Part shown: positions 2,510 through 52,624 of the stretch, in pieces
How positions within the stretch are numbered: the first letter of the stretch is position 1
Layout: each line of letters begins with the position of its first letter
Assembly: GCF_039654945.1 (NCBI RefSeq)
Contig: NW_027361838.1
Span: 21,328,001 to 21,392,000 of the forward strand
Length of the DNA: 64,000 nucleotides
From: Dendrobates tinctorius
Lineage: Eukaryota
Direction: 5' to 3'
Translations under genes and position numbers: made by a program
Notes under the pieces: generated by a model
Databases searched by the model: none
Told to the model about the DNA's origin: nothing
What the model saw: the letters and a program-made list of their open reading frames with translations, nothing else

Positions 2510-3742
2510 CTAAAGCAGTCCCTGGGAGGGGAGCATACATCTGCTAATACCCCATGTACCTCTGAGATAAGACTGAGGTACTGCCGATTGCAGGATGCGT
2601 CTGCCGAGAGCTGTATCTACAGAGGCCTGAGAATGAATTTGGTTATGTTTTGAAAAGGTATGCAGACTGGACCAAGTCGCAGCTTTGTAGACCTGTTCTG
2701 CCGAGGCCTGGCGCCGAATGGCCCAAGAAGCGCTGACTGACCGGGTATAGTGCGCCTTAATCCCCGATGGGACAGGCGCATTCCTGACACGGTAGGATTC
2801 CTGAATCACTGAGCGAATCCACCTGGCTAGCGTTGCTTTGGACACGGCTAGGCCCTTCCTATGCCCCTCTGGAAGTATCAACAGGGCATCTGACTTGCGG
2901 AAGGGAGCCGTCTGCGAGATGTACCGTCTCAGCGCCCTAACCACATCCAGGGTGGAGGGCCTTCTCAATGCGATGGACTGGCGCCGGACAAAAGAAGGCA
3001 AAACAATTTCCTCGTTGAGATGGAAAGAGGAAACGACCTTGGGCAGGAAGGACGGGGACGTCCTGAGAACTACCATATCCTGATGAAAAGTAAGGAATGG
3101 AGAACGGCAGGACAGAGCTGCCAATTCCGAAACCTGTCTGATTGACGCAATTGCTACTAGAAAGACCACTTTCCAAGAGAGGATGGTAAATGACACGTCC
3201 TGCAGCGGTTCAAAAGGATCCTCTTGTAAGGCCCCGAGAACCAGGTTAAGGTCCCATGGTTCTAATGGCCTTCTATAAGGAGGCGTCACATAGGAGACTC
3301 CTTGAATAAACGTCTTGACCTGAGGTTTGGTGGCAATTCTTTGTTGGAAAAGCACTGACAAGGCCGAAATTTGGCCCTTGAGCGAGCTAAGCGCGAGGCC
3401 TGATTTTAATCCGGATTGAAGAAACTCCAATATGCCCAGAATGGAGAACACTAGAGGGGAATGACCATGATCCTTGCACCATGAAAAGAAGATTTTCCAG
3501 GTGCGGTGATAGATACGTCTGAATACGGGCTTCCTAGCATTAATCATGGTGGAAATGATGTCGAGAGAGAATCCAGCCTGTGCTAAAATCCAGGATTCAA
3601 CGGCCATACCGTCAAAGACAGGGCCCCGGAGTTCTGGTGGTAAATCGGGCCCTGAGAAAGCAGATCTGAGCGATCTGGAAGTCGCTAGCGGACGTCGGCG
3701 ACTAGCTGTATTAGTTCCGCATACCATGCTCGGCGTGGCCAA
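2510..3742 (-). pseudogene. DIRS tyrosine recombinase (copy A), probably inactive
   Basis: 410-aa ORF with SIRQVSEL, KAHYTRSVSASWA and TWSSLHTFSKHN; copy B has SIRRISEL and TFTKHY, so the catalytic Arg and Tyr appear substituted in A. Confidence 0.85.
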
Positions 3743-5448
3743 TCTGGTGCGACTAGGATCACTGGTACCCCCTCTGCTCTTATCTTCTTGATGACCCTCG
3801 GAAGCAAGGGGGAAAGATGTACGGAAGCCAGAACCGGTGCCATGGCAGAACTAGGGCTTCCGCTCCGATGGCGCGTGGATCGCGCGATCGGGCAATGAAC
3901 CGAGACACCTTGCTGTTTAGCCTGGAGGCCATGAGGTCCACATACGGAGTCCCCAAACGAAGACAGATCTGGTGAAAGACTTCCGGATGAAGAGACCACT
4001 CTCCTGAGGCAATGGCTTGGCGACTGAGAAAGTCTGCAGCCCAATTTTCTATGCTGGGGATGTCAATTATTGAGATGTATGAATGGTTGGTCTCAGCCCA
4101 ATGGAGGATGTGACTCACTTTGTGCATGGCCATCCTGCTCCGGGTACCTCCCTGGCGTTTGATATACGCTACAGCCGTGGCGTTGTCCGATTGGATCCTG
4201 ATGGGGTGACCTGCGAAGAGATGGTGGAAACTACGTAGAGAAAATCTGATCGCTCGTTTCTCCAAAATGTTGATGGGGAGACGTGATTCTCGGGTTGACC
4301 AAAGACCCTATGCCGTGTGGTGACGAAAGACAGCACCCCAGCCGAGAAGACGAGTCGGTGGTTACTACCAACCATCTTACTGGGAGAAAAGACCTCCCTT
4401 GATTCAGGAAGGACCTCACAGTCCACCACTTGAGGGCTTGCCTGACCCGCAGGGACAGAAGGATTCGACGGTGCAGGGAGAACGGGTTCTTGTCCCAAGC
4501 TGACAGCAACGCATGTTGTAAGGGGCGGAGGTGGAACTATGCAAACGGAACTGCTTCCATGGCAGCCACCATTTTCCCGAGAACTCTCATGCTGAAACGA
4601 ATGGCGTGAGAGGCTGGACGGGAAAGAGTCCCGCACTGCCTGTTGTAAGGCTTGCGTCTTTTCCAGAGGGAGAATGACCCAACCCGCGGCAAGTGTCCAA
4701 GATCATTCCTAAAAAGGAAATTTGCTGAGCCGGTTTTGGGGAAGACTTTGCGAAGTTTATCTTCCACCCCAGGCGTGAAAGTGTATTTACTGTTATCTCC
4801 ACAGATTCTTCACAGGCTGAAAGGGACGGACCCTTGATGAGCAGGTCATCCAGATAAGGTAACACTACTCCTCCCCGAGAGTGGAGAATGGCCATGACAA
4901 CCGCCATGACCTTGGTAAAGACCCTGGGGGCAGTAGCGAGTCCGAAGGGCAAGGCCACGAACTGGAAGTGTTCCTCGTGAATTGCAAAACGCAGGAACTG
5001 CTGGTGAGACGGGCAAATCGGAATGTGAAGGTAAGCGTCCTTGATGTCGATGGATGCTAGGAACTCTCCTTTTTCCATGGAAGCGACCACTGACCGGAGA
5101 GATTCCATTTGGAATCGCCGAACCGTGACAAACTGATTTAACAGTTTGAGATCCAGAATGGGTCGCATCGTGCTGTCTTTCTTTGGAACCACAAAAAGGT
5201 TTGAATAAAATCCTCTGAACCTCTCGTGATGAGGGACCGGAATGATGACTCCGTCCCTTAAGAGGGCCTGAATAGCCCGAAGGAAGGCTCTGGTCTTTCC
5301 TTTGGGCGGAGAGGAAAGGAAAAAGCGAGTTGGAGGGGGAGCGGAGAACTCTATCTTGTATCCGGAGGACACCAGCTCCCTGATTCACTTGTTGTGGACG
5401 ACCGCGAGCCAGGTGTGGCTGAAGGAAAGTAGGCGGTCGCCGTCCGCC
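3685..5448 (-). pseudogene. DIRS pol: reverse transcriptase, RNase H and DAM-methyltransferase-like domain (frameshifted)
   Basis: RPILDLK, SIDIKDAYLHIPI, LPFGLATAPRVFTK, YLDD; IQSDNATAVAYI (RNase H); DLMASRLN..YIFPP..VILVAPDWPRRAWY (MT-like). Confidence 0.9.
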
Positions 5449-5462
5449 GGATACCGCAACAA

Positions 5463-5942
5463 AAGATTTGATATGTAAGCTGTTTTTTGGTATGCACCTG
5501 TTCAGACTAGTTCTAGATGTGCCGTCAGTTTTTTCTGTCATTTGTATGTTAGCTTTCTGACTGAGCACTCCCCCTTCATCAGGCTGTGATTTTAATTACA
5601 TCCAACCACATTTTGGTTCCTATCTTCCTATAAAACAGGCTTTACCATGTTATTAGCCAGAGGTTAGTTCACACTAGGCAGTTAGTATAGGGACCCGTTC
5701 AATGAGATCACCTTGACGTTGGTGAATGGGCTCACATCTTTTGGCCAAATTTTGTGCTAAGTATCTCATATGTTTTTCTAGATTACAAAAGCCATTATAC
5801 TATTCGTATATCACATATTTCATATTTGATATGCCTTAATGCAATTGAGTGCAACCATTTCCTTATTTGATATGTAAGCTGTTTTTTGGTATGCACCTGT
5901 TCAGACAAGTTCTAGATGTGCCGTCAGTTTTTTCTGTCATTT
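5463..5942. mobile_element. Non-coding 1.2-mer of a 399-nt unit (retrozyme-like or Penelope-mobilised) inserted in DIRS A
   Basis: 14-bp TSD ggataccgcaacaa (5449-5462, 5943-5956); about 78-nt direct repeat at 5466 and 5865; absent from DIRS B. Confidence 0.8.
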
Positions 5943-5957
5943 GGATACCGCAACAAG

Positions 5958-7457
5958 TCATTGGGTAGATCTATGAGACCTGGCTCCCTTGGAACCAGAA
6001 GCCCTAGGTCTGGGTTTCCAAGAGCAGTTAGGGTCTGTACGAGACCTGGGAGCCTCTGTATCCGCGCGGAGACGGACCTGATCCGGAAGAGAAGGTAGAG
6101 GATGATCAACCAGAGTGGTTGCGAAAGAAACGAAAGCGCGTCGACTGTTGGTTGCGAAACGGCCAAGCAGCTTTTTGTTGAGGGAGGAATTTACTCTCCC
6201 CCCCCCCCCGGTAGCATCAGAAATGAGCTGATCTAGCTTCTCTCCAAAAAGACGACCCATTTGAAAGTGGAGAGAAGTCAACGATCTTTTAGATGTGGCA
6301 TCCGCCCGCCAGTCGCGAAGCCATAGGACTCTTCTAATGGAGATCGCGTTAGCGACAGTTTGAGCAGCGCAATTGGCGGCGTCAAAAGAGGCGCCCACTA
6401 CAAAGTCTGCTGCGTGAATTATCTGCCTGGCGACCGTGGTTGCTTCCAGAGGAAGATTGGTGTCCTGGAAGGAGGTAATCAAGACCTCTGCCCAAGCGGC
6501 CATTGCTTTCGTGACCCAAATTGCCGCAAAAGATGGAAAAAGCTCTGTTCCTGAAGCTTCAAAAACTGAACGGGCAAGGTAGTCAATCTGACGATCGGAG
6601 GGGTTTCTGATCGAGGAACCCTCGGACACAGACAGAAGCGTTTTTGAAGCCAGATGCGATACAGGCGGGTCCACCAGAGGGGACTGTAACCAATCTTTCA
6701 TTGAGTCTGGGTCAAAAGGGTATTTAGCCTGAGTAAACTTTTGCCCTGTGAACTGCTTATGAAGACGATCCCTATGTTGCTGGACAACTTCCTTAAAGTC
6801 CGGATGGCTGGTAAATAACCTGTGCAACCGCTTGGTTTTCTTAAGTGAAATAGGATGTGCTGGAGCGGGAACATTATCCTCATCCAACTTCAGAATCCTG
6901 TTAACTGATTCTGTAAGAGAATCAAGCGACTCTTGATCAGTTGGGGGATTCTGAGGGGCAGACGAGTCAGAATCAAATTCAGAGTCGAGCTCGCTGAGAA
7001 CTCCAGGAGAGGGAGAGCGAGAGAGACAGGCGTCGCAGGGTTTAGAGGCGCGAACGGGGCTAGGGGAAGCGTCATGGGTCCGCTTTCTAGAGCCCCGACC
7101 ATCCCTTGAACGAGTACGGCCCCTGCTGGTGGACGGTTCCCGTTCGACGCCAGAGCCTTCCTCGGGGGGTAAGGACGCCTTCTGGCTTAAAGAGCCCTCC
7201 CGGAGGGAGAATATAGCCTGGGTCAGAGACTCCACCGACTGACAGGGATGCAGCCCACTCAGGGGTACTAAACGCAGGAGACCCGTCAGCAGCGGTGGCA
7301 AGGGGCGATTGAGCGCAGGTCGGGGCGCAGGCCGGGTCGCAGTTAGTGCATAATGGATTAGTCTGTGCACTAGGTAAGGCAGACTTGCAAGAGGTACACA
7401 CGGTAAAAAAACGCAGTGCTTTTTAGCAGCCCGTTTCGCTTCCTTAGATTGAGACAT
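5958..7457 (-). pseudogene. DIRS gag-like ORF1 (copy A)
   Basis: 499-aa ORF with compensating frameshifts; PLVDPPVSHL, RRVLWLRDWRADATSK, GRLFGEKLDQLIS motifs; CxxC..CxxC in the alternate frame near the start. Confidence 0.85.
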
Positions 7458-16896: not shown

Positions 16897-17773
16897 TGTC
16901 ATGAACTCATTTTCTGCTCCATCAGTTGAGAGTTCCCCCTTCCGTTCTCCCTCTGGTGGTGACAGGAGGTAGTGCGGTTGGTTTAAGTGGTCGTGATCTG
17001 CCACCTGATAAGGAAGATAACGATTGGATCTCTGGAGTATCAGACTGGATATAAGACTGCCGACGCCCTATCCAGGTGCTGGTGATTCAGTCTGCTTCTC
17101 AGGTCCTGGACTTCAGCTCTCTTCCAGTCTTCTCAAGTTAAGTTATTTTTGCTAATGTTCACACTTGCGCTTGTTGGTCAATTCAGTTTTTTGTGCAATC
17201 AGCCTGCCCCTGCTGGGGCTATGCTGAAATTCCACTCCTATTAATCAGTATTTGCCAATCTGATTTTTGTCCCTTATTAGAGTGGCCTCTTTTTTGCTCT
17301 GTCTCTGAAATATTCTGAGTGCTGATATAGGTTTAGAAGTCTAGTGACTTCAGGGTTAATTTTGCTATCAGAAGTGTTGGACAATATTTTTGTAGGGTTT
17401 TTTTGGCAGATTGCAGACAGTGTCTTTCCTTTGCTGTCCTTTTTAGTTAGCCGGGCCCCATCGTTTGCTCAGCCTATTTTCCTGCCTTTGTTTGTATTTT
17501 CATCTTGTTTCACAGTCAATACATGTGGGGGGGCTGTCTTTCCTTTGGGGTCTGCTCTGGGGCAGTTAGTTAGTTTTCCTCTTTTCCTGCTTTAGGCTTA
17601 TGTAGTTCTCCGGTTGTGACGAGGCGTCTAGGACCAACGTAGGAACGCTCCACGACTGCTGCTAGTTGTGCGGTTAAGATCAGGGATCTGCAATCTGCAT
17701 AGTTACCAACTTCTCTGGTTTTCTGAGACTTAGCTTGTTGTCTTTTTTCCTCTTCGGTTTCCTATTCATAATA
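16897..17773. mobile_element. Solo LTR inserted in the DIRS A leader
   Basis: tgtcatgaa..ttcataata termini, 6-bp TSD gtcgcc; absent from DIRS B. Confidence 0.8.
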
Positions 17774-18159
17774 GTCGCCCCCTTCACTCCATTAAAAAAT
17801 AAAAATTTACAGAAAGATTCAAAAAAAAATAAACGGTGGGGTCTGAAACCAGGCCCAAGTGCCTCCTACAGACACTAAGTATGAACTGGAGATATCTCAT
17901 CCAGCTGCGGGGTGTATACTGCAGGGGAGGAGTTAACTTTTATTCTGGTTTGCTTAGTGTCCTCCTAGTGGCAGCAGCATAACACAGACTGTCTCTGTGT
18001 CCCCCAATGAGGCGTAGGAGAAATTAGTTATATTATACTCACCCAGGGGCGGTCCTGGTCCGGTTTTGGTCCGATGGGTGTCACGGTCCGGCACCTCCCA
18101 TCTTCTAACGTTCTAACGGTGACATCTTCTTCTTTGCTGCCTGTCGTGGCTCCTGTGCA

Positions 18160-18723
18160 AAATGAGGATGAATGAACTCATGGAGATCAACATCCAACAC
18201 TGCGGAGACACCATCACATGTTTCTCAACGCAGTGATTCTAGAGCAATGCTCCCATCCCTTATGGGAAATATGCAAAAACATGCAAAACACAAGCCGCGG
18301 AGACACCATCACGTGTTTCTCAACACAAGCAATGACTAGCCAGGTCTTTCCCCGGGAAGGAACAACCACGGGAAGGGCAGTCTCCAATGAAGGAAACCAC
18401 CTATGCTAAAACATGGTATCCATCCACAGACAGCTGTTTCGGGGTATTGCCCCTCATCAGTGTGGAGTAGGAAACTGGCTAGTAGGAGCAATGCCTAGTA
18501 AAAGACTGAAAAATGAGGATGAATGAACTCATGGAGATCAACATCCAACACTGCAGAGACACCATCACGTTTCTTAACACAGTGATTCTAGAGCAATGCT
18601 CCCATCCCTTATGGGAAATATAATATCACAGTCTTTTACTAGGCATCCTTCCCGGGGAAAGACCTGGCTAGTCATTGCTTGCGTTGAGAAACACGTGATG
18701 GTGTCTCCGCGGCTTGTGTTTTG
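18160..18723 (-). mobile_element. Non-LTR retrozyme: about 1.3 copies of a 351-nt hammerhead-containing unit plus an inverted 5' segment
   Basis: Unit restarts at 18162 and 18513; 15-bp TSD cgtgg(c/t)tcctgtgca (18145-18159, 18724-18738); about 18630-18723 is inverted unit sequence. Confidence 0.9.
18423..18466 (-). ncRNA. Minimal type I hammerhead ribozyme
   Basis: Minus strand uccaca-CUGAUGA-gggg-caaua-cccc-GAAA-c-agcu-GUC/ugugga: intact core, 6-bp stem I, 4-bp stem II, 2-bp stem III with a palindromic AGCU loop. Confidence 0.95.
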
Positions 18724-19140
18724 CGTGGTTCCTGTGCAGGCGCACTGCTCTGCCCAGTTGAGGGCAGAGCAGAATACTGCAGTGCGTAGGCGCCGGATCT
18801 GTCCCGGCGCCTGCGCACTGCAGGACTCTGTTCTGCCCTCAACAGGGCAGAGCAGTGCACCGGCGCAGGAGCCACGACAGGAAGGAAAGAAGAAGACGTC
18901 ACTGTTAGAAGATGGGAGGCACCGGACCGCAACACCCATCGGACCAAGACCGGACCGCCCCCCGGTGAGTATAATTTAAATAAATTTTTCTTATCTTTCA
19001 GGTTACATCGGGGGCTTATCTACAGCATTACAGAATGCTGTAGATAAGCCATTGATGTCGGTGCTGGCAGCTGACAGGCGAAAAATAGGGTGACAGGTTC
19101 CCTTTGAGTAAATGGATGAACCATACAAACACACATACAG

Positions 19141-19324
19141 CAGTGTTCCCCAACTCCAGTCCTCAAGAGCCACCAACGGTTCATGTTTTCAGGATTTCCT
19201 TAGTATTACCCAGGTGATAATTGCAGAACCTGCACAGCCAATACTTCCATCACGTGCAATACTAAGGAAATCCTGAAAACATAACCTGTTGGTGGCTCCA
19301 GAGGACTGGAGTTGGGGAACATTG
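19141..19324. mobile_element. Short palindromic hAT-like MITE
   Basis: cagtgttccccaactccagtcctc..ggactggagttggggaacattg; second copy at 52901-53040. Confidence 0.8.
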
Positions 19325-21760: not shown

Positions 21761-21957
21761 TTATTGTCAACCTAACCTCCTAGTGACAGCAGTCGCTACA
21801 ACCCAGTCTGTGTCCCTCAATGACATGGATGAGAAAACATGGCTGACTACTTCAGTGAAGAGAATATAACTGGGCTGCAATATTACACAACTTGTGGATA
21901 GGTATGGCAGTGTTTTTAGAAAGAGAAAAAAAAAAAAAAGAAGCCTAAATAGATTAC

Positions 21958-22469
21958 CTTTAACATCAGGATCATCTATGTGCGGCTCCAGGTTTTCAAT
22001 CATCTCCTCCAGCTCTTTTCTGGTAGCCATAGCTATATTGGGAGAGCCGGGGGATGACACCTTGACTCCTGCCTTATCTGGGCTGTGTGCTTCAGCTTGT
22101 GAATGCCTAAGTTCCAGATCTATATCGATTTCAGGAATTGGAGTCCTCCAGTAATGGAACGAATTGAATAGCTCTTGCTCAGTAACAAGCCTCTCCTGAG
22201 ATTGCAAATCTAAAGCTTTCGATGCTTCTGCATCTGGAGAACATTGTTCAAAAGAGTCAACTGAATTCTCCAAAGTGCAATGTGGAAGAAAGTCTACAGA
22301 GTGATTGGTGACCCTAAAGATTTCATCGGAAGCCAGATCATCATCCAAATTGGTGTCTAGCTTCACAGTGAAGGTAAGAGGGCTGTGGTCTGTTTCAGAC
22401 CCATGTGTTGCGGCTGCATCTTCTGGGGTAGCACTCTCCGTATCTTTCAGAAGACAACTGCTCGAGGTT
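21958..22469 (-). CDS. PPP4R1: PPP4R1 large coding exon (about exon 11), ..QELFNSFHYWRTPIPEIDIDLEL..SPNIAMATRKELEEMIENLEPHIDDPDVK
   Basis: Frame open from the acceptor (cttttagcag|, alternative start 22472) to the |GTAATC donor; conserved PPP4R1 blocks flank a divergent linker. Confidence 0.93.
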
Positions 22470-27138: not shown

Positions 27139-30100
27139 GAAGACTGGAAAGCATGTATTTGGAAGTCGCCTTGCTACACTTGTAAGGAGAGCTTTAAACT
27201 AGAACAACATGGGAAGGGAAGCAAAAGACCAGAAAAAGCCATACACCTGACAAATGCTATTGAGAACTCTGCTAATAGAAGTGGAAAGGAAGAACAAAGA
27301 CGAAAGAATCTAATTAATAAAAATATTGGAGAAAGAGAAACCAATCACAAACTAAAATGTTTCTATACTAATGCACAAAGCATGGGCAACAAACAAGGAG
27401 AATTGGAACTACTAACACAGGAAAAGAAATATGATGTCATTGGAACCACTGAAACTTGGTGGGACAATACACATGATTGGAATACAAGGCTAGAAGGATA
27501 CAACTTATTTGCAAGAAACAGACTTGATAAACGAGGAGGAGGTGTTGCATTGTATGTTAGAAACGCGTATATCTGCACAGAGATTGAAGCTTCAGAGACT
27601 GGGAGTTCTGTGGAAACTGTTTGGGTAAGAATACAAGGACAGAACAATGGAAAGGACACCATTGTAGGCATTTACTACAGGCCGCCTGTGCAAGCTGAAG
27701 ATATGGATGAACTCTTTATGCATCAAATGGCCAAGTTCTCCAAAAAATATGACATAGTTGTCATGGGAGATTTCAACTATCCAGACATTTGTTGGGAATC
27801 TCTCTCAGGCAAAACTAACAGGTCAAGGAAATTCTTATCCTCTCTTGCTGACAACTTTATCTTCCAAAAGGTAGGGGAGAAAACAAGGGGAACTGCTACC
27901 TTGGATCTAATCCTTATAAACAGGGAGGAAATGGTTGAGGAGGTAAAAGTGGCTGGAACCCTAGGAGGTAGCGACCATGCTATTTTAGAATTTTGGATAA
28001 CTAGAGGCGGAAGACCTGTGAAGACTCAGACGTCAAGGTTAGATTTCAGAAAGGCAGATTTTAAGGGATTCAGAAAGAGAATTGGAGGGATCCAATGGCT
28101 GGATATCCTTAAAGACAAAAATGTCCAGGAAGGATGGGAAATCTTGAAAAATGAAATTCTCAAAGCACAGTTGTTAACAATTCCGAAAAGAGGGAAGAAT
28201 AGGAAGCATTTAAGGAAACCAGGATGGGTGAACACAGAACTTAAGCACATGCTAAAAAGGAAGAAAAAAATGTTTATAAAATGGAAAGAGGGAGGCATAT
28301 CTAAAGAAGAATATAATGCTGTCTGCAGAATCTGCAGGGCACAAATCAGATTATCTAAAGCTGAAAATGAATTGAGGCTTGCAAGAGATGTCAAAAGCAA
28401 TAATAAAGGATTCTGGGGATATGTCAAAAGTAAAAGAAAAGTCAAAGATGCTATAGGATTTTTACAGGATGAAAATGATGAAATGGTAAGACAGGATGTT
28501 GAGAAGGCTGAACTTTTAAATTCCTATTTTGCATCTGTTTTCTCTCAGAAAGGAAATGTAACACCAACTGTTATTCACTGTCCTATTAAGGGAATAGAAG
28601 AATCCAGGATATCTATAAACAGAAAGATAGTGAGGAAACACTTAGCTAACCTAAATGAATTCAAGTCTCCAGGTCCAGATGAATTACACCCCAGAGTACT
28701 GAAGGAGATAGCAGAAGAAATTTTTGAACCCCTCTCCATAATCTTTGAAAATTCTTGGAGAACAGGAGAAGTGCCAGAAGACTGGAGAAGAGCAAATGTT
28801 GTTCCTATCTTCAAAAAGGGGAAGAAGGTGGACCCAGGCAACTATAGGCCGGTGAGTCTGACTTCTATACCAGGAAAGATCTTTGAACAAATTATTAAAC
28901 AACATGTAAGTCAATACCTGGATAAGAATGAAGTGATCAAACAGAGTCAGCATGGGTTTGTAACTAATAAGTCATGTCAGACTAACTTAATTTCCTTCTA
29001 TGACGGTATCACTGATTGGGTGGATCAAGGAAATGCTGTAGATATAGTATATCTTGACTTCAGCAAAGCATTTGACAAAGTCTCTCATACAATCCTTATT
29101 GAAAAAATGACTAAGTATGGAATGGACAAGGCAACTGTTAGGTGGATTCATAGCTGGCTTAGTGATCGGACCCAAAGAGTGGTCGTAAATGGCTGCACAT
29201 CCAGTTGGAAGAATGTCTCAAGTGGGGTACCACAGGGCTCTGTCCTGGGCCCTGTATTGTTCAACATCTTTATCAACGATTTAGATGAAGGAATTGAGGG
29301 TAAACTGATTAAATTTGCTGATGACACAAAGCTAGGAGGGATAGCTAATACTAGAGAAGAGAGAGAGAGAGGATTCAAAAAGATTTAAATAAACTGGAGA
29401 AGTGGGCAGTAACTAACAGAATGGTTTTTAACAGGGAGAAATGCAAAGTACTACATCTGGGCAATAAAAATGAAAAAAGCATATATAGAATGGGAGGAAT
29501 AGGGCTAAGTGACAGCACATGTGAAAAAGACTTGGGTATACTAATAGATCACAGACTGAATATGAGTCAACAGTGTGATGCAGCAGCAAAAAAGGCAAAT
29601 GCAGTTCTAGGATGTATTAACAGAAGCATACAGTCTAGATCACGTGAAGTCATTATTTCCCTCTACTCCTCTTTGGTCAGACCTCATCTGGAATAGTGTG
29701 TCCAGTTTTGGGCACCACATTTTAAAAAAGACATCAACAAACTGGAGCAAGTTCAGAAAAGAGCGACCAGAATGGTGACCGGTCTGCAAACCCTGTCTTA
29801 TGAGGAAAGGTTGCAGGATTTGGGAATGTTTAGTTTGCAAAAGAGAAGACTGAGAGGAGACTTAATTGCTGTCTACAAATATCTAAAGGGCTGTCACATT
29901 GTAGAAGGATCAACTTTATTCTCATTTGCACAAGGAAAGACTAGAAGCAATGGGATGAAACTGAATGGGAGGAGACACAGATTAGATATTAGAAAAAACT
30001 TTTTGACAGTTAGAGTGATCAATGAGTGGAACAGGCTGCCACGAGAAGTGGTGAGTTCTCCTTCAATGGAAGTCTTCAAACAGAGGCTGGACAGACATCT

Positions 30101-50192: not shown

Positions 50193-51159
50193 TTATGCAG
50201 TTGTTTCATTAAGGCGGCCACGAAGCATTTTAAAGCTTTCATCTGAAGACAAATAAACCTTTTTTTTTTTTTTTGGACGACAGGTTCCCTTTAATTATTG
50301 ATCAGCATTTGCAAAGTTGTGAATCTTTGTAGAGCACTCCATTACTTAATCTTGTTTCTTTTTCTACTAGACTCCATGTTGAAAGTGCAGTTTGAAATGC
50401 GTTTTCATGCCAGTCTAGCAAATATCCGTGCTCCTGTGTGAGCTTCTCTGCTCCCCTTGCCCAGACACTATTTACAAGCTCTCTCCCTGTGAGCATGTAG
50501 AGAGGAAGAGCGTACAGAAGCTCACACAGGAGTGCGGATTAGCTGATTCGCAGGACCCCATCAGTCGGCCATGTTAGTGACAGCTGGATAGGAGTCCTTC
50601 TGCAGCCCTCAGGGATGCCGATTACTGATGTGGCAGATGGACCAGGAATTGATTTGCACCAACTGTAACCCGTACTCCTGTGCGAGTGCCATAGGAGACC
50701 ATCATTTACACTACACAAAGCAAAATGTCATAATTTAGTACTGCAGCTAAGAAGCGATTGAAGGATTTGAGGGCTCAAGTCTTCTCAAATGACTAAAATA
50801 ATTAAAAAAAAAAAAGTTATAATACATACGGTATTTATTATGCTTTGCTTATATAGCACCATTAATTCCACAGTGCATTACATACATATATCTCATGACA
50901 CATCTTTTCCCAGTTTGTAAATAAATTTTTAAAAAGTCATGTTTTTTTCTTCACCTGTAAAAGTCCTATTGTAATATAAAAGTAATAAAAAAAACATTTC
51001 TTGAGTTGTTGCAAGTGTTCTAAAAAAAAAAATAAAAAAAAAAAATTAAATGTAAAGAGATCAGAACCTCGCATGTACTCCGAAATGGCACAAATGCCAG
51101 CTTTACACACAAAAAAACTGAGTCGGACGCCTCTGACACAGCAACACCAGATCTCACAC

Positions 51160-51204
51160 TTTGCACTGATGAGGGGCAGAACCCCGAAACACAGCATCTG
51201 CAAA
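51160..51204 (+). ncRNA. Type I hammerhead ribozyme (stem III mismatch)
   Basis: uuugca-CUGAUGA-gggg-cagaa-cccc-GAAA-cacagc-AUC/ugcaaa; stem I extends via ucuca/ugaga and ccaga/ucugg. Confidence 0.88.
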
Positions 51205-51234
51205 TTGAGATTCTGGTTTTGGCTTTTATCCTAA

Positions 51235-51635
51235 GGCCTCTTTCACACTTCAGTTTTTTACAATCAGTCACAATCCGCCAGGTTTTGAAAAAAACGGATC
51301 CTCAATTTTCTTTTGCGGATCCGTTTTTTTCCCCCCATTGACTTCCATTAATGGCAGATTGTGACGGATTGGCGTCCGTTGCATCCGTTTTTTTTGAGGA
51401 TCCGCCAAAAGTTGCTGTCCGTCACCATCCTCAAAGATTTCAAAACGGAGCTTGCAACGTAAAAAATTCTCTCTCCCTCTCTCTCAGGCTGCGATTCCTT
51501 TAAAATTCTTCATTTGTCGGATCCGTCAAAAAAACGGACGGGTGGCATCCGTTGTCATCAGTACTAAAACGGATCCGCCATCCGTCCTTTTGGCGGATTT
51601 TGACTGATGCAAAAAACTGAAGTGTGAAAGAGGCC
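51235..51635. mobile_element. PIF/Harbinger-like MITE
   Basis: taa|ggcctctttcacacttcag..ctgaagtgtgaaagaggcc|taa. Confidence 0.9.
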
Positions 51636-52624
51636 TAAGTCATGTAACAAGGCTCGTTAAAGGGTCGACATTGACTTTTAGGATTGCTACTTCCAATAGG
51701 TGGCACTAGAATTCTAGTCCACTTCCTCTCTGAAGAGACAGTTTGCATAAAACAAAAATTAGTAAAAAAAAAACAAAAAAAAAACCCACTTCATCCAAAT
51801 TTGATTCCCCCCCCCCATTTCAAGTACAATATATAATATATGATTAAGTGAAAGGTATAACTGAAAACTACAACTTGTCTCAAAAAAAAAAAAAAAAGCT
51901 CTCACACAGTCATGTCAATGGAAAAGTAAAAGTTCAAACTCTTCAAAAGAAGTGGAGGAAAAAATAAAAGTGCAAGAAAAATGGTTAAGCAAAAGCTATG
52001 CAGGGATGAACAAGAGCAGACCCCATCCCATGCCTGGTATGTAATTGCTGGATCACAGTTTGGCATCTTGTCACGTACAGCATCTGTGTGATAATCTGCA
52101 GCCAATTAGTGGTTTAATAATGGTGGGCTGCATTACTGGAACAGCGGCTATGAGGAGAAAAGCACGTTTTATTCAGCTCTCACTTTCAGTCCTTGGTGAA
52201 GGGAACAGTAGTCTACTTACTACAAGGAGGCGAGTCATTTATCACTGCACAGCTAATTGACTGACAGCCTGCGTGACACACTGGATAGTTGGCTGCGAGT
52301 CAAGATTCAGGGGAGCGATTACAGAGCGCTCAGTGTATGGTGACTAACAACTCCCTGCACCGCCCCGATGACTAAGCAAGCGGCTGCAGGGAGAATATAA
52401 CTTCATTTTCTCACTGTAGCAGTGCTTTCAATAAGCCCGCCTGGCATCAAAATGCCATTTACCTGCAGATTACCATTGTATCTGCAGGTAAAGTGTTTTT
52501 ATTAAAGCATCAGGTTCCCTTTAAATGGTTAATGTTTGATGGGTTTAGCTTTAGTTTTAACCTTAGTTTTATTGAGGTTTCTGAAATCAGAAGCAGCAAA
52601 GAGACTTTTATCCAAAGTGACCAA

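What the first reader, a model, noticed from the sequence alone, without database searches (positions are those of the whole stretch)
18160..18723. Intact hammerhead retrozyme inserted in the sense of PPP4R1 pre-mRNA
Seen: a 351-nt unit with a perfect minimal type I hammerhead (predicted cut between 18429 and 18428), a 15-bp TSD and an inverted segment at its 5' side. Established: amphibian satellite-2-like and non-LTR retrozymes are tandem hammerhead repeats that yield small linear or circular RNAs, and short stem III forms need dimerisation through the palindromic loop. Inference: the 5' inversion and TSD length point to Penelope-type mobilisation. Because the ribozyme is on the host-transcribed strand, the intron could be cut in trans by pairing with retrozyme RNA from other loci.
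Basis: partly seen in the sequence, partly recalled or inferred. Interest (0 to 1): 0.75.

Follow-up and report, generated by a model that had tools for sequence, protein, structure and literature searches.

The report
Dead-end frog hammerhead retrozyme insertion
This is one 564-base copy of a very abundant, non-coding frog repeat that carries a small self-cutting (hammerhead) RNA motif; it was pasted by reverse transcription into an intron of a phosphatase-subunit gene, and it is a tidy but ordinary example of a kind already described in amphibians.

Summary
At 18160-18723 lies a 564-bp insert: 1.32 head-to-tail copies of a 351-nt unit (18160-18621, sense on the minus strand), 7 filler bases, then a 95-nt inverted arm (18629-18723). 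A 15-bp target duplication (14/15 identical) flanks it. A hammerhead with every core position intact sits on the minus strand and would cut between 18429 and 18428.

The other arm of the palindromic host repeat serves as an empty site and confirms an insertion. The PPP4R1-like exons are on the minus strand, so the ribozyme is in the gene's sense.

- The motif is the canonical metazoan type I form (6-bp helix I, 4-bp helix II, 2-bp helix III with palindromic loop), not the "minimal" Penelope-type form.
- The insert holds only one hammerhead, so it cannot release a unit-length RNA. It is a dead-end copy.

The family is hugely multicopy in DNA contigs of this species and present in two others. 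Amphibian non-LTR retrozymes, their need for dimeric hammerheads, their link to Penelope-like elements and their frequent intronic location are all published. This scan has already reported the same 351-353-nt frog family on other DNA (s1-376832, s1-366788). Cutting of the intron in trans is structurally possible but untested.

The parts
18145..18159 (.). Left copy of the 15-bp target-site duplication (CGTGGCTCCTGTGCA). The last A could also come from the element (1-nt microhomology).
   Evidence: D5; empty-site alignment
18160..18621 (-). Main arm: 462 nt, or 1.32 head-to-tail units of the 351-nt repeat. Ribozyme sense is on the minus strand and the 3' end of the RNA sense abuts the left TSD.
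18423..18466 (-). Type I hammerhead. Helix I is 18466-18461 paired with 18428-18423 (6 bp). The CUGAUGA box is 18460-18454. Helix II is GGGG/CCCC with loop CAAUA. GAAA follows, then helix III AC/GU with loop AGCU. C17 is 18429 and the predicted cut is 18429|18428. It is the only hammerhead in the insert.
18622..18628 (.). 7 untemplated or filler bases (AATATCA) at the head-to-head joint of the two arms.
18629..18723 (+). Inverted arm, 95 nt, with ribozyme sense on the plus strand. It equals unit parts 18508-18491 plus 18361-18283 read in sense, and so skips about 130 nt that include the hammerhead. It has 1 mismatch to the main arm. Its 3' end abuts the right TSD.
   Evidence: (I1, I8)
18724..18738 (.). 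Right copy of the TSD (CGTGGTTCCTGTGCA).
   Evidence: D5
18016..18991 (.). Palindromic, MITE-like host repeat into whose left arm the retrozyme inserted. Its right arm is an internal 'empty site'.
   Evidence: (I2-I5)
21940..22366 (-). Nearest upstream host exon (approximate bounds). It encodes ...FNSFHYWRTPIPEIDIDLE...EPHIDDPDVK and matches Pfam PF15017. It shows that the gene is transcribed on the minus strand towards the insert.

Best explanation
The 564-bp insert is the product of one retrotransposition event of an abundant, ORF-less frog non-LTR hammerhead retrozyme (351-nt unit).

Shown:
- It is an insertion with a 15-bp TSD into a palindromic MITE-like repeat, in the intron that follows the WRTPIPEID exon of a PPP4R1-like gene.
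- It consists of two arms whose RNA-sense 3' ends both point outwards.

Inferred mechanism:
1. Two nicks staggered by 15 bp were made in the target.
2. Both free 3'-OH ends primed reverse transcription on hammerhead-sense retrozyme RNA at U-rich internal sites (...CAUUUU and ...GUGUUUUG), helped by short microhomology.
3. One cDNA ran 462 nt, more than one unit. The template was therefore a circular monomer copied round, or a linear multimer. The other cDNA ran 95 nt with a ~130-nt skip.
4. The two cDNAs were joined head-to-head with 7 filler bases, and gap repair made the TSD.

This two-strand priming, partial tandem and inverted 5' arm fit a Penelope-like element RT/GIY-YIG machinery acting in trans (about 0.65). 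A LINE-type twin priming is the alternative.

With a single hammerhead of the weak-helix-III, dimer-dependent class, the copy cannot excise a unit-length RNA. It is most likely a neutral, slowly decaying passenger of the intron.
For: Anatomy:
- Repeat, TSD and inverted arm.
- Empty site: the other arm of the host palindrome aligns without a break across the junction and carries the TSD sequence once.
- Hammerhead core and cut site. The homodimer MFE is exactly a double hammerhead with an 8-bp intermolecular helix III, at -47.9 against 2 x -21.2 kcal/mol.
- The unit folds far better than shuffles, z -4.6 in sense. It has no ORF, 47% GC and depleted CpG.

Age:
- The overlapping repeat parts differ by 3 substitutions, two of them CpG>CpA, and one 2-nt indel. 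This fits decay after insertion.

Family:
- 23,087 DNA contigs of one run laid on the 1.5-kb stretch, with summed depth 0.5-1.1 million on the unit against 641-29,442 in the least-covered flank bins. Contigs from tiny runs match with 0-3 differences. Runs labelled as two other organisms hold about a third of its words.
- This copy's hammerhead equals the majority form.

Gene:
- Strand and position.

Literature:
- Amphibian retrozymes of 330/353 nt with dimer-dependent HHRs and circRNAs: PMC7229834.
- Canonical metazoan type I HHR architecture: PMC4209133.
- PLE hallmarks (partial tandem, inverted 5'-truncated copy, variable TSD): PMC8557442.
- A PLE protein cleaves and extends both target strands and initiates internally: PMC11167929.
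- Vertebrate retrozymes as PLE derivatives, two HHRs needed, 44% intronic in Xenopus: 10.64898/2026.07.22.740005.
Against: - No PLE (RT plus GIY-YIG) is in the window; Pfam on the long ORFs found only an APE-type LINE and DIRS parts.
- No similarity to a PLE pLTR could be tested.
- No 30-40-bp PLE 'tail' is evident.
- Rfam does not score the hammerhead above threshold.
- No RNA evidence: all runs were contigs, the 'RNA?' runs are guesses, and they cover flanking repeats as well.
- The exons downstream of the insert are not in the window, so the intronic position is inferred from about 430 residues of the protein still to be encoded.
- The gene name rests on my recollection of the human protein, plus a weak PP2A-A match (E 8e-6) and PF15017.
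Confidence: 0.85

Rival explanations
1. The intronic sense-strand hammerhead is functional. It pairs through its palindromic helix III with abundant retrozyme RNA from other loci, the PPP4R1 pre-mRNA is cut at 18429|18428, and this lowers or modulates expression of the gene.
For: - The ribozyme strand is the gene strand.
- The core is intact and equals the family majority form.
- The dimer fold is a double hammerhead about 5.5 kcal/mol better than two monomers.
- Amphibian HHRs of this class cleave efficiently only as dimers (PMC7229834, PMC4209133).
Against: - There are no RNA data for this locus.
- Intermolecular dimerisation needs high local RNA concentration.
- In vitro, 8 of 9 Xenopus retrozyme dimers did not cleave at all (10.64898/2026.07.22.740005).
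- About 44% of Xenopus copies are intronic, so such copies are widely tolerated.
- The copy shows ordinary neutral decay: CpG losses, a TSD mismatch and a private change at 18407.
- A slow cut inside an intron need not affect the spliced mRNA. This last point is my inference.
Confidence: 0.04
2. The insertion was made by a LINE (APE-type, e.g. CR1/L2 or L1-like) through classical twin priming, not by a Penelope-like element.
For: - Twin priming by LINEs also gives a 5' inverted arm and TSDs of about 15 bp (established knowledge).
- An APE+RT LINE ORF2 lies in the same window at 27382-29388, so LINEs are present in this genome.
Against: - The element has no poly(A) or microsatellite 3' tail; the two arms end at different internal U-rich sites.
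- More than one unit was copied head-to-tail, the partial-tandem signature of PLEs (PMC8557442).
- Type I HHRs are shared with PLE pLTRs, and Xenopus retrozyme families group with PLE pLTRs (10.64898/2026.07.22.740005).
- A PLE protein extends both target strands and initiates internally (PMC11167929).
Confidence: 0.12
3. It is not a retroposition. A piece of a hammerhead satellite array was moved here by DNA-level recombination or duplication.
For: Such repeats also form long arrays that grow by unequal crossing-over (10.64898/2026.07.22.740005, discussion).
Against: - There are precise 15-bp direct duplications of the target and an intact empty-site counterpart.
- The head-to-head arms have outward 3' ends and filler bases at the joint.
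Confidence: 0.03

Closest known systems
Amphibian non-LTR retrozymes (axolotl Rtz_353/Rtz_331; Cervera & de la Pena 2020, PMC7229834) and Xenopus retrozyme families (Li, Clavereau & Pollet 2026 preprint)
   Same: - ORF-less repeat of about 350 nt with GC below 50%.
- One type I hammerhead per unit, with a weak helix III and a palindromic loop that calls for dimers.
- Dispersed copies in very high number, TSDs longer than 4 bp, and often intronic.
- The axolotl Ax353 hammerhead in that paper's supplement has the same GAAAC-NNNN-GU layout (compared by eye only).
   Different: - This locus has only 1.32 units and one hammerhead, so it is a 'monomer' derivative and not an active dimer or multimer.
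- Helix II here is a clean 4-bp GGGG/CCCC stem, without the U-U mismatch of HHR_Amex2.
- By eye there is no sequence similarity to Ax353 outside the ribozyme core.
- RNA circles were not shown for this frog.
Penelope-like element insertions (pLTR partial tandems with an inverted 5'-truncated copy; PMC8557442, PMC11167929)
   Same: Partial tandem, an adjacent inverted 5'-truncated arm, a TSD of variable length (here 15 bp), internal initiation of reverse transcription, use of both target strands, and a hammerhead in the repeated part.
   Different: - It has no RT/GIY-YIG ORF, so it is non-autonomous.
- The hammerhead is the canonical type I form, not the min-HHR typical of metazoan PLE pLTRs.
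- No 30-40-bp tail was seen.
- Homology to a pLTR was not tested.
Newt satellite 2 hammerhead transcripts and the double-hammerhead model (Forster et al. 1988, as cited in PMC4209133 and PMC7229834)
   Same: A type I hammerhead with a very short helix III and a palindromic loop, active as a dimer. Here the 8-nt palindrome ACAGCUGU gives an 8-bp shared helix III.
   Different: Helix III has two base pairs rather than one, the unit is 351 rather than about 330 nt, and this is a single dispersed copy rather than an array.
Conserved intronic hammerheads of amniotes (HH9/HH10; cited in PMC7761336)
   Same: A hammerhead in the sense strand of a host intron.
   Different: Those are single-copy, deeply conserved and efficient as monomers. 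This one is a young copy of a repeat with no sign of conservation at the locus.

Membership tests
Hammerhead ribozyme, canonical metazoan type I | Conserved core: C3 U4 G5 A6 N7 G8 A9, G12 A13 A14, A15.1-U16.1, H17 | tested here: met
   CUGAUGA ... GAAA ... A-U ... GUC| on the minus strand at 18460-18429; 0.00 expected by chance.
Hammerhead ribozyme, canonical metazoan type I | Helix I about 6 bp (open), helix II 4 bp, helix III 1-2 bp capped by a 2-4-nt palindromic loop (PMC4209133) | tested here: met
   UCCACA/UGUGGA (6 bp), GGGG/CCCC (4 bp), AC/GU plus AGCU.
Hammerhead ribozyme, canonical metazoan type I | Score at or above the gathering threshold of an Rfam hammerhead model | tested here: not met
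   No gathering hit. The best was RF00008 at 16 bits against 48.5, E 3.7. The 2-bp helix III is penalised by these models.
Hammerhead ribozyme, canonical metazoan type I | Self-cleavage, as monomer or dimer | not testable with these tools
   Only thermodynamic support for the dimer exists.
Non-LTR retrozyme | Non-coding head-to-tail repeat of 150-450 bp carrying a type I HHR, GC below 50%, no LTR/PBS/PPT | tested here: met
   351-nt unit, 1.32 copies, 47% GC, no ORF.
Non-LTR retrozyme | Dispersed multicopy family with TSDs longer than 4 bp | tested here: met
   15-bp TSD and empty site. Tens of thousands of matching contigs in DNA runs.
Non-LTR retrozyme | [quoted passage not shown] 2026) | tested here: not met
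   There is one HHR. The next one would fall at about 18828 or 18126, outside the insert.
Non-LTR retrozyme | Expression as unit-length linear and circular RNA | not testable with these tools
   Only assembled contigs were on hand, and the RNA status of the runs is guessed.
Penelope-like (PLE-mobilised) insertion | Partial tandem, plus an inverted 5'-truncated copy at the 5' end, plus a variable-length TSD | tested here: met
   definition from PMC8557442.
Penelope-like (PLE-mobilised) insertion | 30-40-bp 'tail' extension at one end | tested here: not met
   Both arms abut the TSD directly, and only 7 filler bases lie at the inner joint. The tail is described as frequent, not obligatory.
Penelope-like (PLE-mobilised) insertion | Sequence relationship of the unit to the pLTR of an autonomous PLE in the same genome | not testable with these tools
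   No PLE is in the window and there is no access to the rest of the genome.

The most novel reading that the evidence does not exclude
Sense-oriented intronic copies such as this one are cut in trans. Abundant retrozyme RNA would pair through the ACAGCUGU palindrome to complete a double hammerhead on nascent pre-mRNA. The retrozyme RNA pool would then act as a diffusible, sequence-guided nuclease on the many host introns that carry a single copy.
Probability: 0.04. Interest if true: 0.7.

Novelty: new member of a known kind. Interest (0 to 1): 0.2.

Why it matters
As a single locus it matters little. It is another copy of a published class, and this scan has already reported the same family in this genome.

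Its modest value is as a very clean insertion scar. The two outward-facing arms show that hammerhead-sense RNA longer than one unit was the template, and that both target strands primed reverse transcription. That is the behaviour recently shown in vitro for a Penelope-like element protein. A family-wide census of such scars could turn the proposed retrozyme-PLE partnership from a phylogenetic correlation into a mechanistic inference.

Tried and rejected
- Rfam at gathering thresholds found nothing in the whole window. At E up to 10 the hammerhead reached only 16 bits, and the many sub-threshold miRNA 'hits' at 18730-18870 are just the central hairpin of the palindromic host repeat.
- Tandem Repeats Finder reports nothing, because there are only 1.3 copies.
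- An exact-pattern scan of the metagenome contigs for this hammerhead found no match.
- The search of earlier findings by sequence was blank.
- RNA evidence: all runs offered were Logan contigs. The 'RNA?' runs X15 and X17 cover flanking repeats in about the same proportion as the DNA run, so expression, strand, ends and circles cannot be judged.
- Copy number cannot be derived from summed contig depth. I report abundance only qualitatively.
- Exons downstream of the insert were sought with short remembered peptide motifs and not found in the window. Those motifs are leads from memory, not tests.
- Exons were examined one by one by reference.
- The axolotl Ax353 sequence in the supplement of PMC7229834 was compared by eye only.
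- 'Minimal hammerhead' was rejected in favour of the canonical type I form.
- Run-off of reverse transcriptase at a hammerhead-cleaved 5' end was rejected as the cause of the ~130-nt skip in the inverted arm. The skip boundary (18361) is 67 nt away from the cleavage site.

Full report
**What is in the sequence**

Read on the minus strand, which is the ribozyme sense, the region 18738 to 18145 is laid out as follows:
- a 15-bp direct repeat at 18724-18738;
- a 95-nt arm in the opposite orientation at 18723-18629;
- 7 bases that match nothing at 18628-18622;
- 462 nt, or 1.32 head-to-tail copies of a 351-nt unit, at 18621-18160;
- the second copy of the 15-bp repeat at 18145-18159.

The two 15-mers differ at one base. 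The overlapping parts of the tandem (18160-18272 and 18511-18621) differ by three substitutions and one 2-nt indel. Two of the substitutions are CpG to CpA. The inverted arm differs from the main arm at one position, also a CpG/TpG site.

The unit has 47% GC, has less than half the expected CpG and has no ORF of note. It folds much better than shuffled controls on both strands, with z -4.6 in sense and -5.4 in antisense. An internal 31-nt duplication lies inside the unit (D3).

**The hammerhead**

On the minus strand at 18466-18423 the sequence reads UCCACA / CUGAUGA / GGGG-CAAUA-CCCC / GAAA / C-AGCU-G / UC | UGUGGA. Every invariant core position is present. A hammerhead descriptor finds this one site in 64 kb, against 0.00 expected.

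Helix I has 6 bp, helix II has 4 bp, and helix III has 2 bp capped by a palindromic tetraloop. That is the 'canonical' metazoan type I architecture defined in PMC4209133. It is not the helix-III-less 'min-HHR' of metazoan Penelope-like elements, so 'minimal' is the wrong word.

Rfam does not reach threshold, giving 16 bits for RF00008. I attribute this to the very short helix III.

The eight bases ACAGCUGU are self-complementary. RNAcofold of two copies returns exactly the double hammerhead, with an 8-bp shared helix III, at -47.9 kcal/mol against -42.4 for two monomers. This agrees with the published need of amphibian hammerheads to act as dimers (PMC7229834).

**It is an insertion**

The insert sits in the left arm of a roughly 1-kb palindromic, MITE-like repeat at about 18016-18991 (I2-I5). 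I removed 18160-18738 and aligned the remainder to the reverse complement of the right arm. The alignment is uninterrupted across the junction, and the 15-mer is present once. This is an internal empty site, and it shows that the 15-mers are a target-site duplication.

**Geometry and mechanism**

In the main arm the RNA-sense 3' end (...CAUCCUCAUUUU) abuts the left TSD. In the inverted arm the RNA-sense 3' end (...GGCUUGUGUUUUG) abuts the right TSD. Both arms therefore start at the outside with a 3' end of hammerhead-sense RNA.

This is what is expected if the two target strands, nicked 15 bp apart, each primed a cDNA. At the right junction the similarity between target and element continues for several bases (GCGTGGTT against GCATGTTT). 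At the left junction one A is shared. Both suggest microhomology-assisted internal initiation.

The main cDNA is longer than one unit, so the template was either a circular monomer or a multimer. The near-identity of the overlapping parts, with differences mostly at CpG, fits identical copies at insertion followed by decay. It does not prove a circle.

The inverted arm skips about 130 nt (18490-18362), which include the hammerhead. The boundary is not at the cleavage site, so it is a template jump or a later deletion, not run-off at a cleaved end.

Partial tandems, an adjacent inverted 5'-truncated copy and TSDs of variable length are the textbook marks of Penelope-like element insertions (PMC8557442). 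A purified PLE protein cleaves and extends both target strands and initiates internally (PMC11167929). I therefore favour mobilisation by a PLE in trans, at about 0.65. LINE twin priming is the alternative. There is no poly(A) or LINE-type tail, but also no PLE in the window and no 'tail' extension.

**One hammerhead only**

With 1.32 units there is a single hammerhead. The neighbouring ones would fall outside the insert. [quoted passage not shown] This locus is thus a dead-end copy. 'Intact' applies to the ribozyme core, not to the retrozyme.

**Family**

- Word search found the stretch in runs labelled with three organisms.
- Laying contigs of four runs on 17700-19200 gave 23,087 matching contigs from one DNA run. 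Summed depth was 0.5-1.1 million over the unit, against 641-29,442 in the least-covered flank bins.
- Very small runs gave contigs that match with 0-3 differences, for example a 250-nt contig over 18299-18546.
- The hammerhead of this copy equals the majority form. The only frequent variant in it is in loop 2 (18446).
- T at 18407 is private to this copy.

These figures are not copy numbers, but they show a very abundant and fairly homogeneous family. Expression cannot be judged, because all runs were contigs and their RNA status is a guess.

**Host gene**

Stop-free stretches on the minus strand, in descending coordinates, encode:
- ...RAELMEQVPHLAMFCQENRPSIP...VVRYLADQNNQ at about 44.4k;
- ...LIDLTAPDSNDDVKTEAV at about 43.8k;
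- ...PRFCEMCCDCRMFHVRKVC at about 32.9k;
- ...CSDNVWGVRKACAECFMAVSCAT...DPSRWV at about 32.2k;
- VRQAAFQSLGPFISTFANPSSSGQYF at about 23.2k;
- ...FNSFHYWRTPIPEIDIDLE...EPHIDDPDVK at about 22.0-22.4k.

I recognise these as PPP4R1 from memory, which makes the name a lead. Tool support is as follows. The 32.2k exon matches HEAT repeats of the PP2A scaffold subunit only weakly (E 8e-6), as expected for a PR65-like paralogue rather than PP2A-A itself. The 22k exon matches Pfam PF15017.

No later exon is in the window. The insert lies about 3.2 kb downstream of the last recognisable exon, and about 430 residues remain to be encoded, so its intronic, sense-strand position is an inference, though a safe one.

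**Comparison with what is known**

The following are all published:
- amphibian non-LTR retrozymes of 330-353 nt, their dimer-dependent type I hammerheads and their circular RNAs (PMC7229834, PMC7761336);
- their distribution in frogs, their relation to PLE pLTRs, and the fact that about 44% of Xenopus copies are intronic (10.64898/2026.07.22.740005).

The same preprint found that eight of nine Xenopus dimer constructs did not cleave in vitro, which tempers any assumption of activity.

Earlier follow-ups in this scan describe the same 352-353-nt frog family on other DNA, including a two-armed copy (s1-376832, s1-366788). My results agree with them, but I derived mine independently from this locus.

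**Verdict**

It overstates the locus as 'intact', and the trans-cleavage idea remains an untested possibility (about 4%).

It is a new copy of a known kind, of low interest by itself and useful mainly as a clean specimen of the insertion scar.

Noticed in passing
window 51145-51215 (+): A second, solitary type I hammerhead-like motif: UUUGCA-CUGAUGA-GGGG(CAGAA)CCCC-GAAA...AUC|UGCAAA. It has a 6-bp helix I extended by UCUCA/UGAGA, but only a 1-bp, non-palindromic helix III. It shares just the 28-nt core with the 351-nt family (93%), is not in a tandem repeat, lies antisense to the gene, and a MITE (TIRs 51231-51262 and 51608-51639) lies about 30 nt downstream of it. The fold has z -3.4.
   Followed up: partly
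window 18016-18991: Palindromic MITE-like repeat of about 1 kb (arms 83-91% complementary) that hosts the insertion. Its central hairpin at 18724-18876 produces many sub-threshold Rfam miRNA matches (best 49 bits against a gathering score of 77.5), which are artefacts of the palindrome. It is itself multicopy in the DNA contigs.
   Followed up: partly
window 18975-19076: A short stretch just right of the host repeat, including the hairpin 19005-19058, is as deeply covered in DNA contigs as the retrozyme (summed depth about 0.7-1.0 million). This indicates another extremely abundant small repeat.
   Followed up: no
window 44607-21940 (-): Six recognisable exons of a PPP4R1-like gene on the minus strand (about 44.4k, 43.8k, 32.9k, 32.2k, 23.2k, 22.0-22.4k), separated by introns full of transposable elements. 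The 22k exon matches Pfam PF15017 (WRNPLPNID).
   Followed up: partly
window 27382-29388 (+) and 2510-7457 (-): An APE+RT LINE ORF2 (Exo_endo_phos plus RVT_1), and DIRS-like ORFs, one with a LAP2alpha-like domain. No GIY-YIG/Penelope ORF was seen among ORFs of 180 aa or more.
   Followed up: partly
window 18202-18232 and 18297-18327: A 31-nt internal direct duplication (94% identical) inside the 351-nt unit (GCGGAGACACCATCAC[A/G]TGTTTCTCAAC[G/A]CA). Its meaning is unknown.
   Followed up: no
window 5463-5942: Another first-stage note on this window (s1-364537) reports a 399-nt-unit 1.2-mer with retrozyme-like architecture but no hammerhead. blastn shows no similarity to the 351-nt unit.
   Followed up: partly
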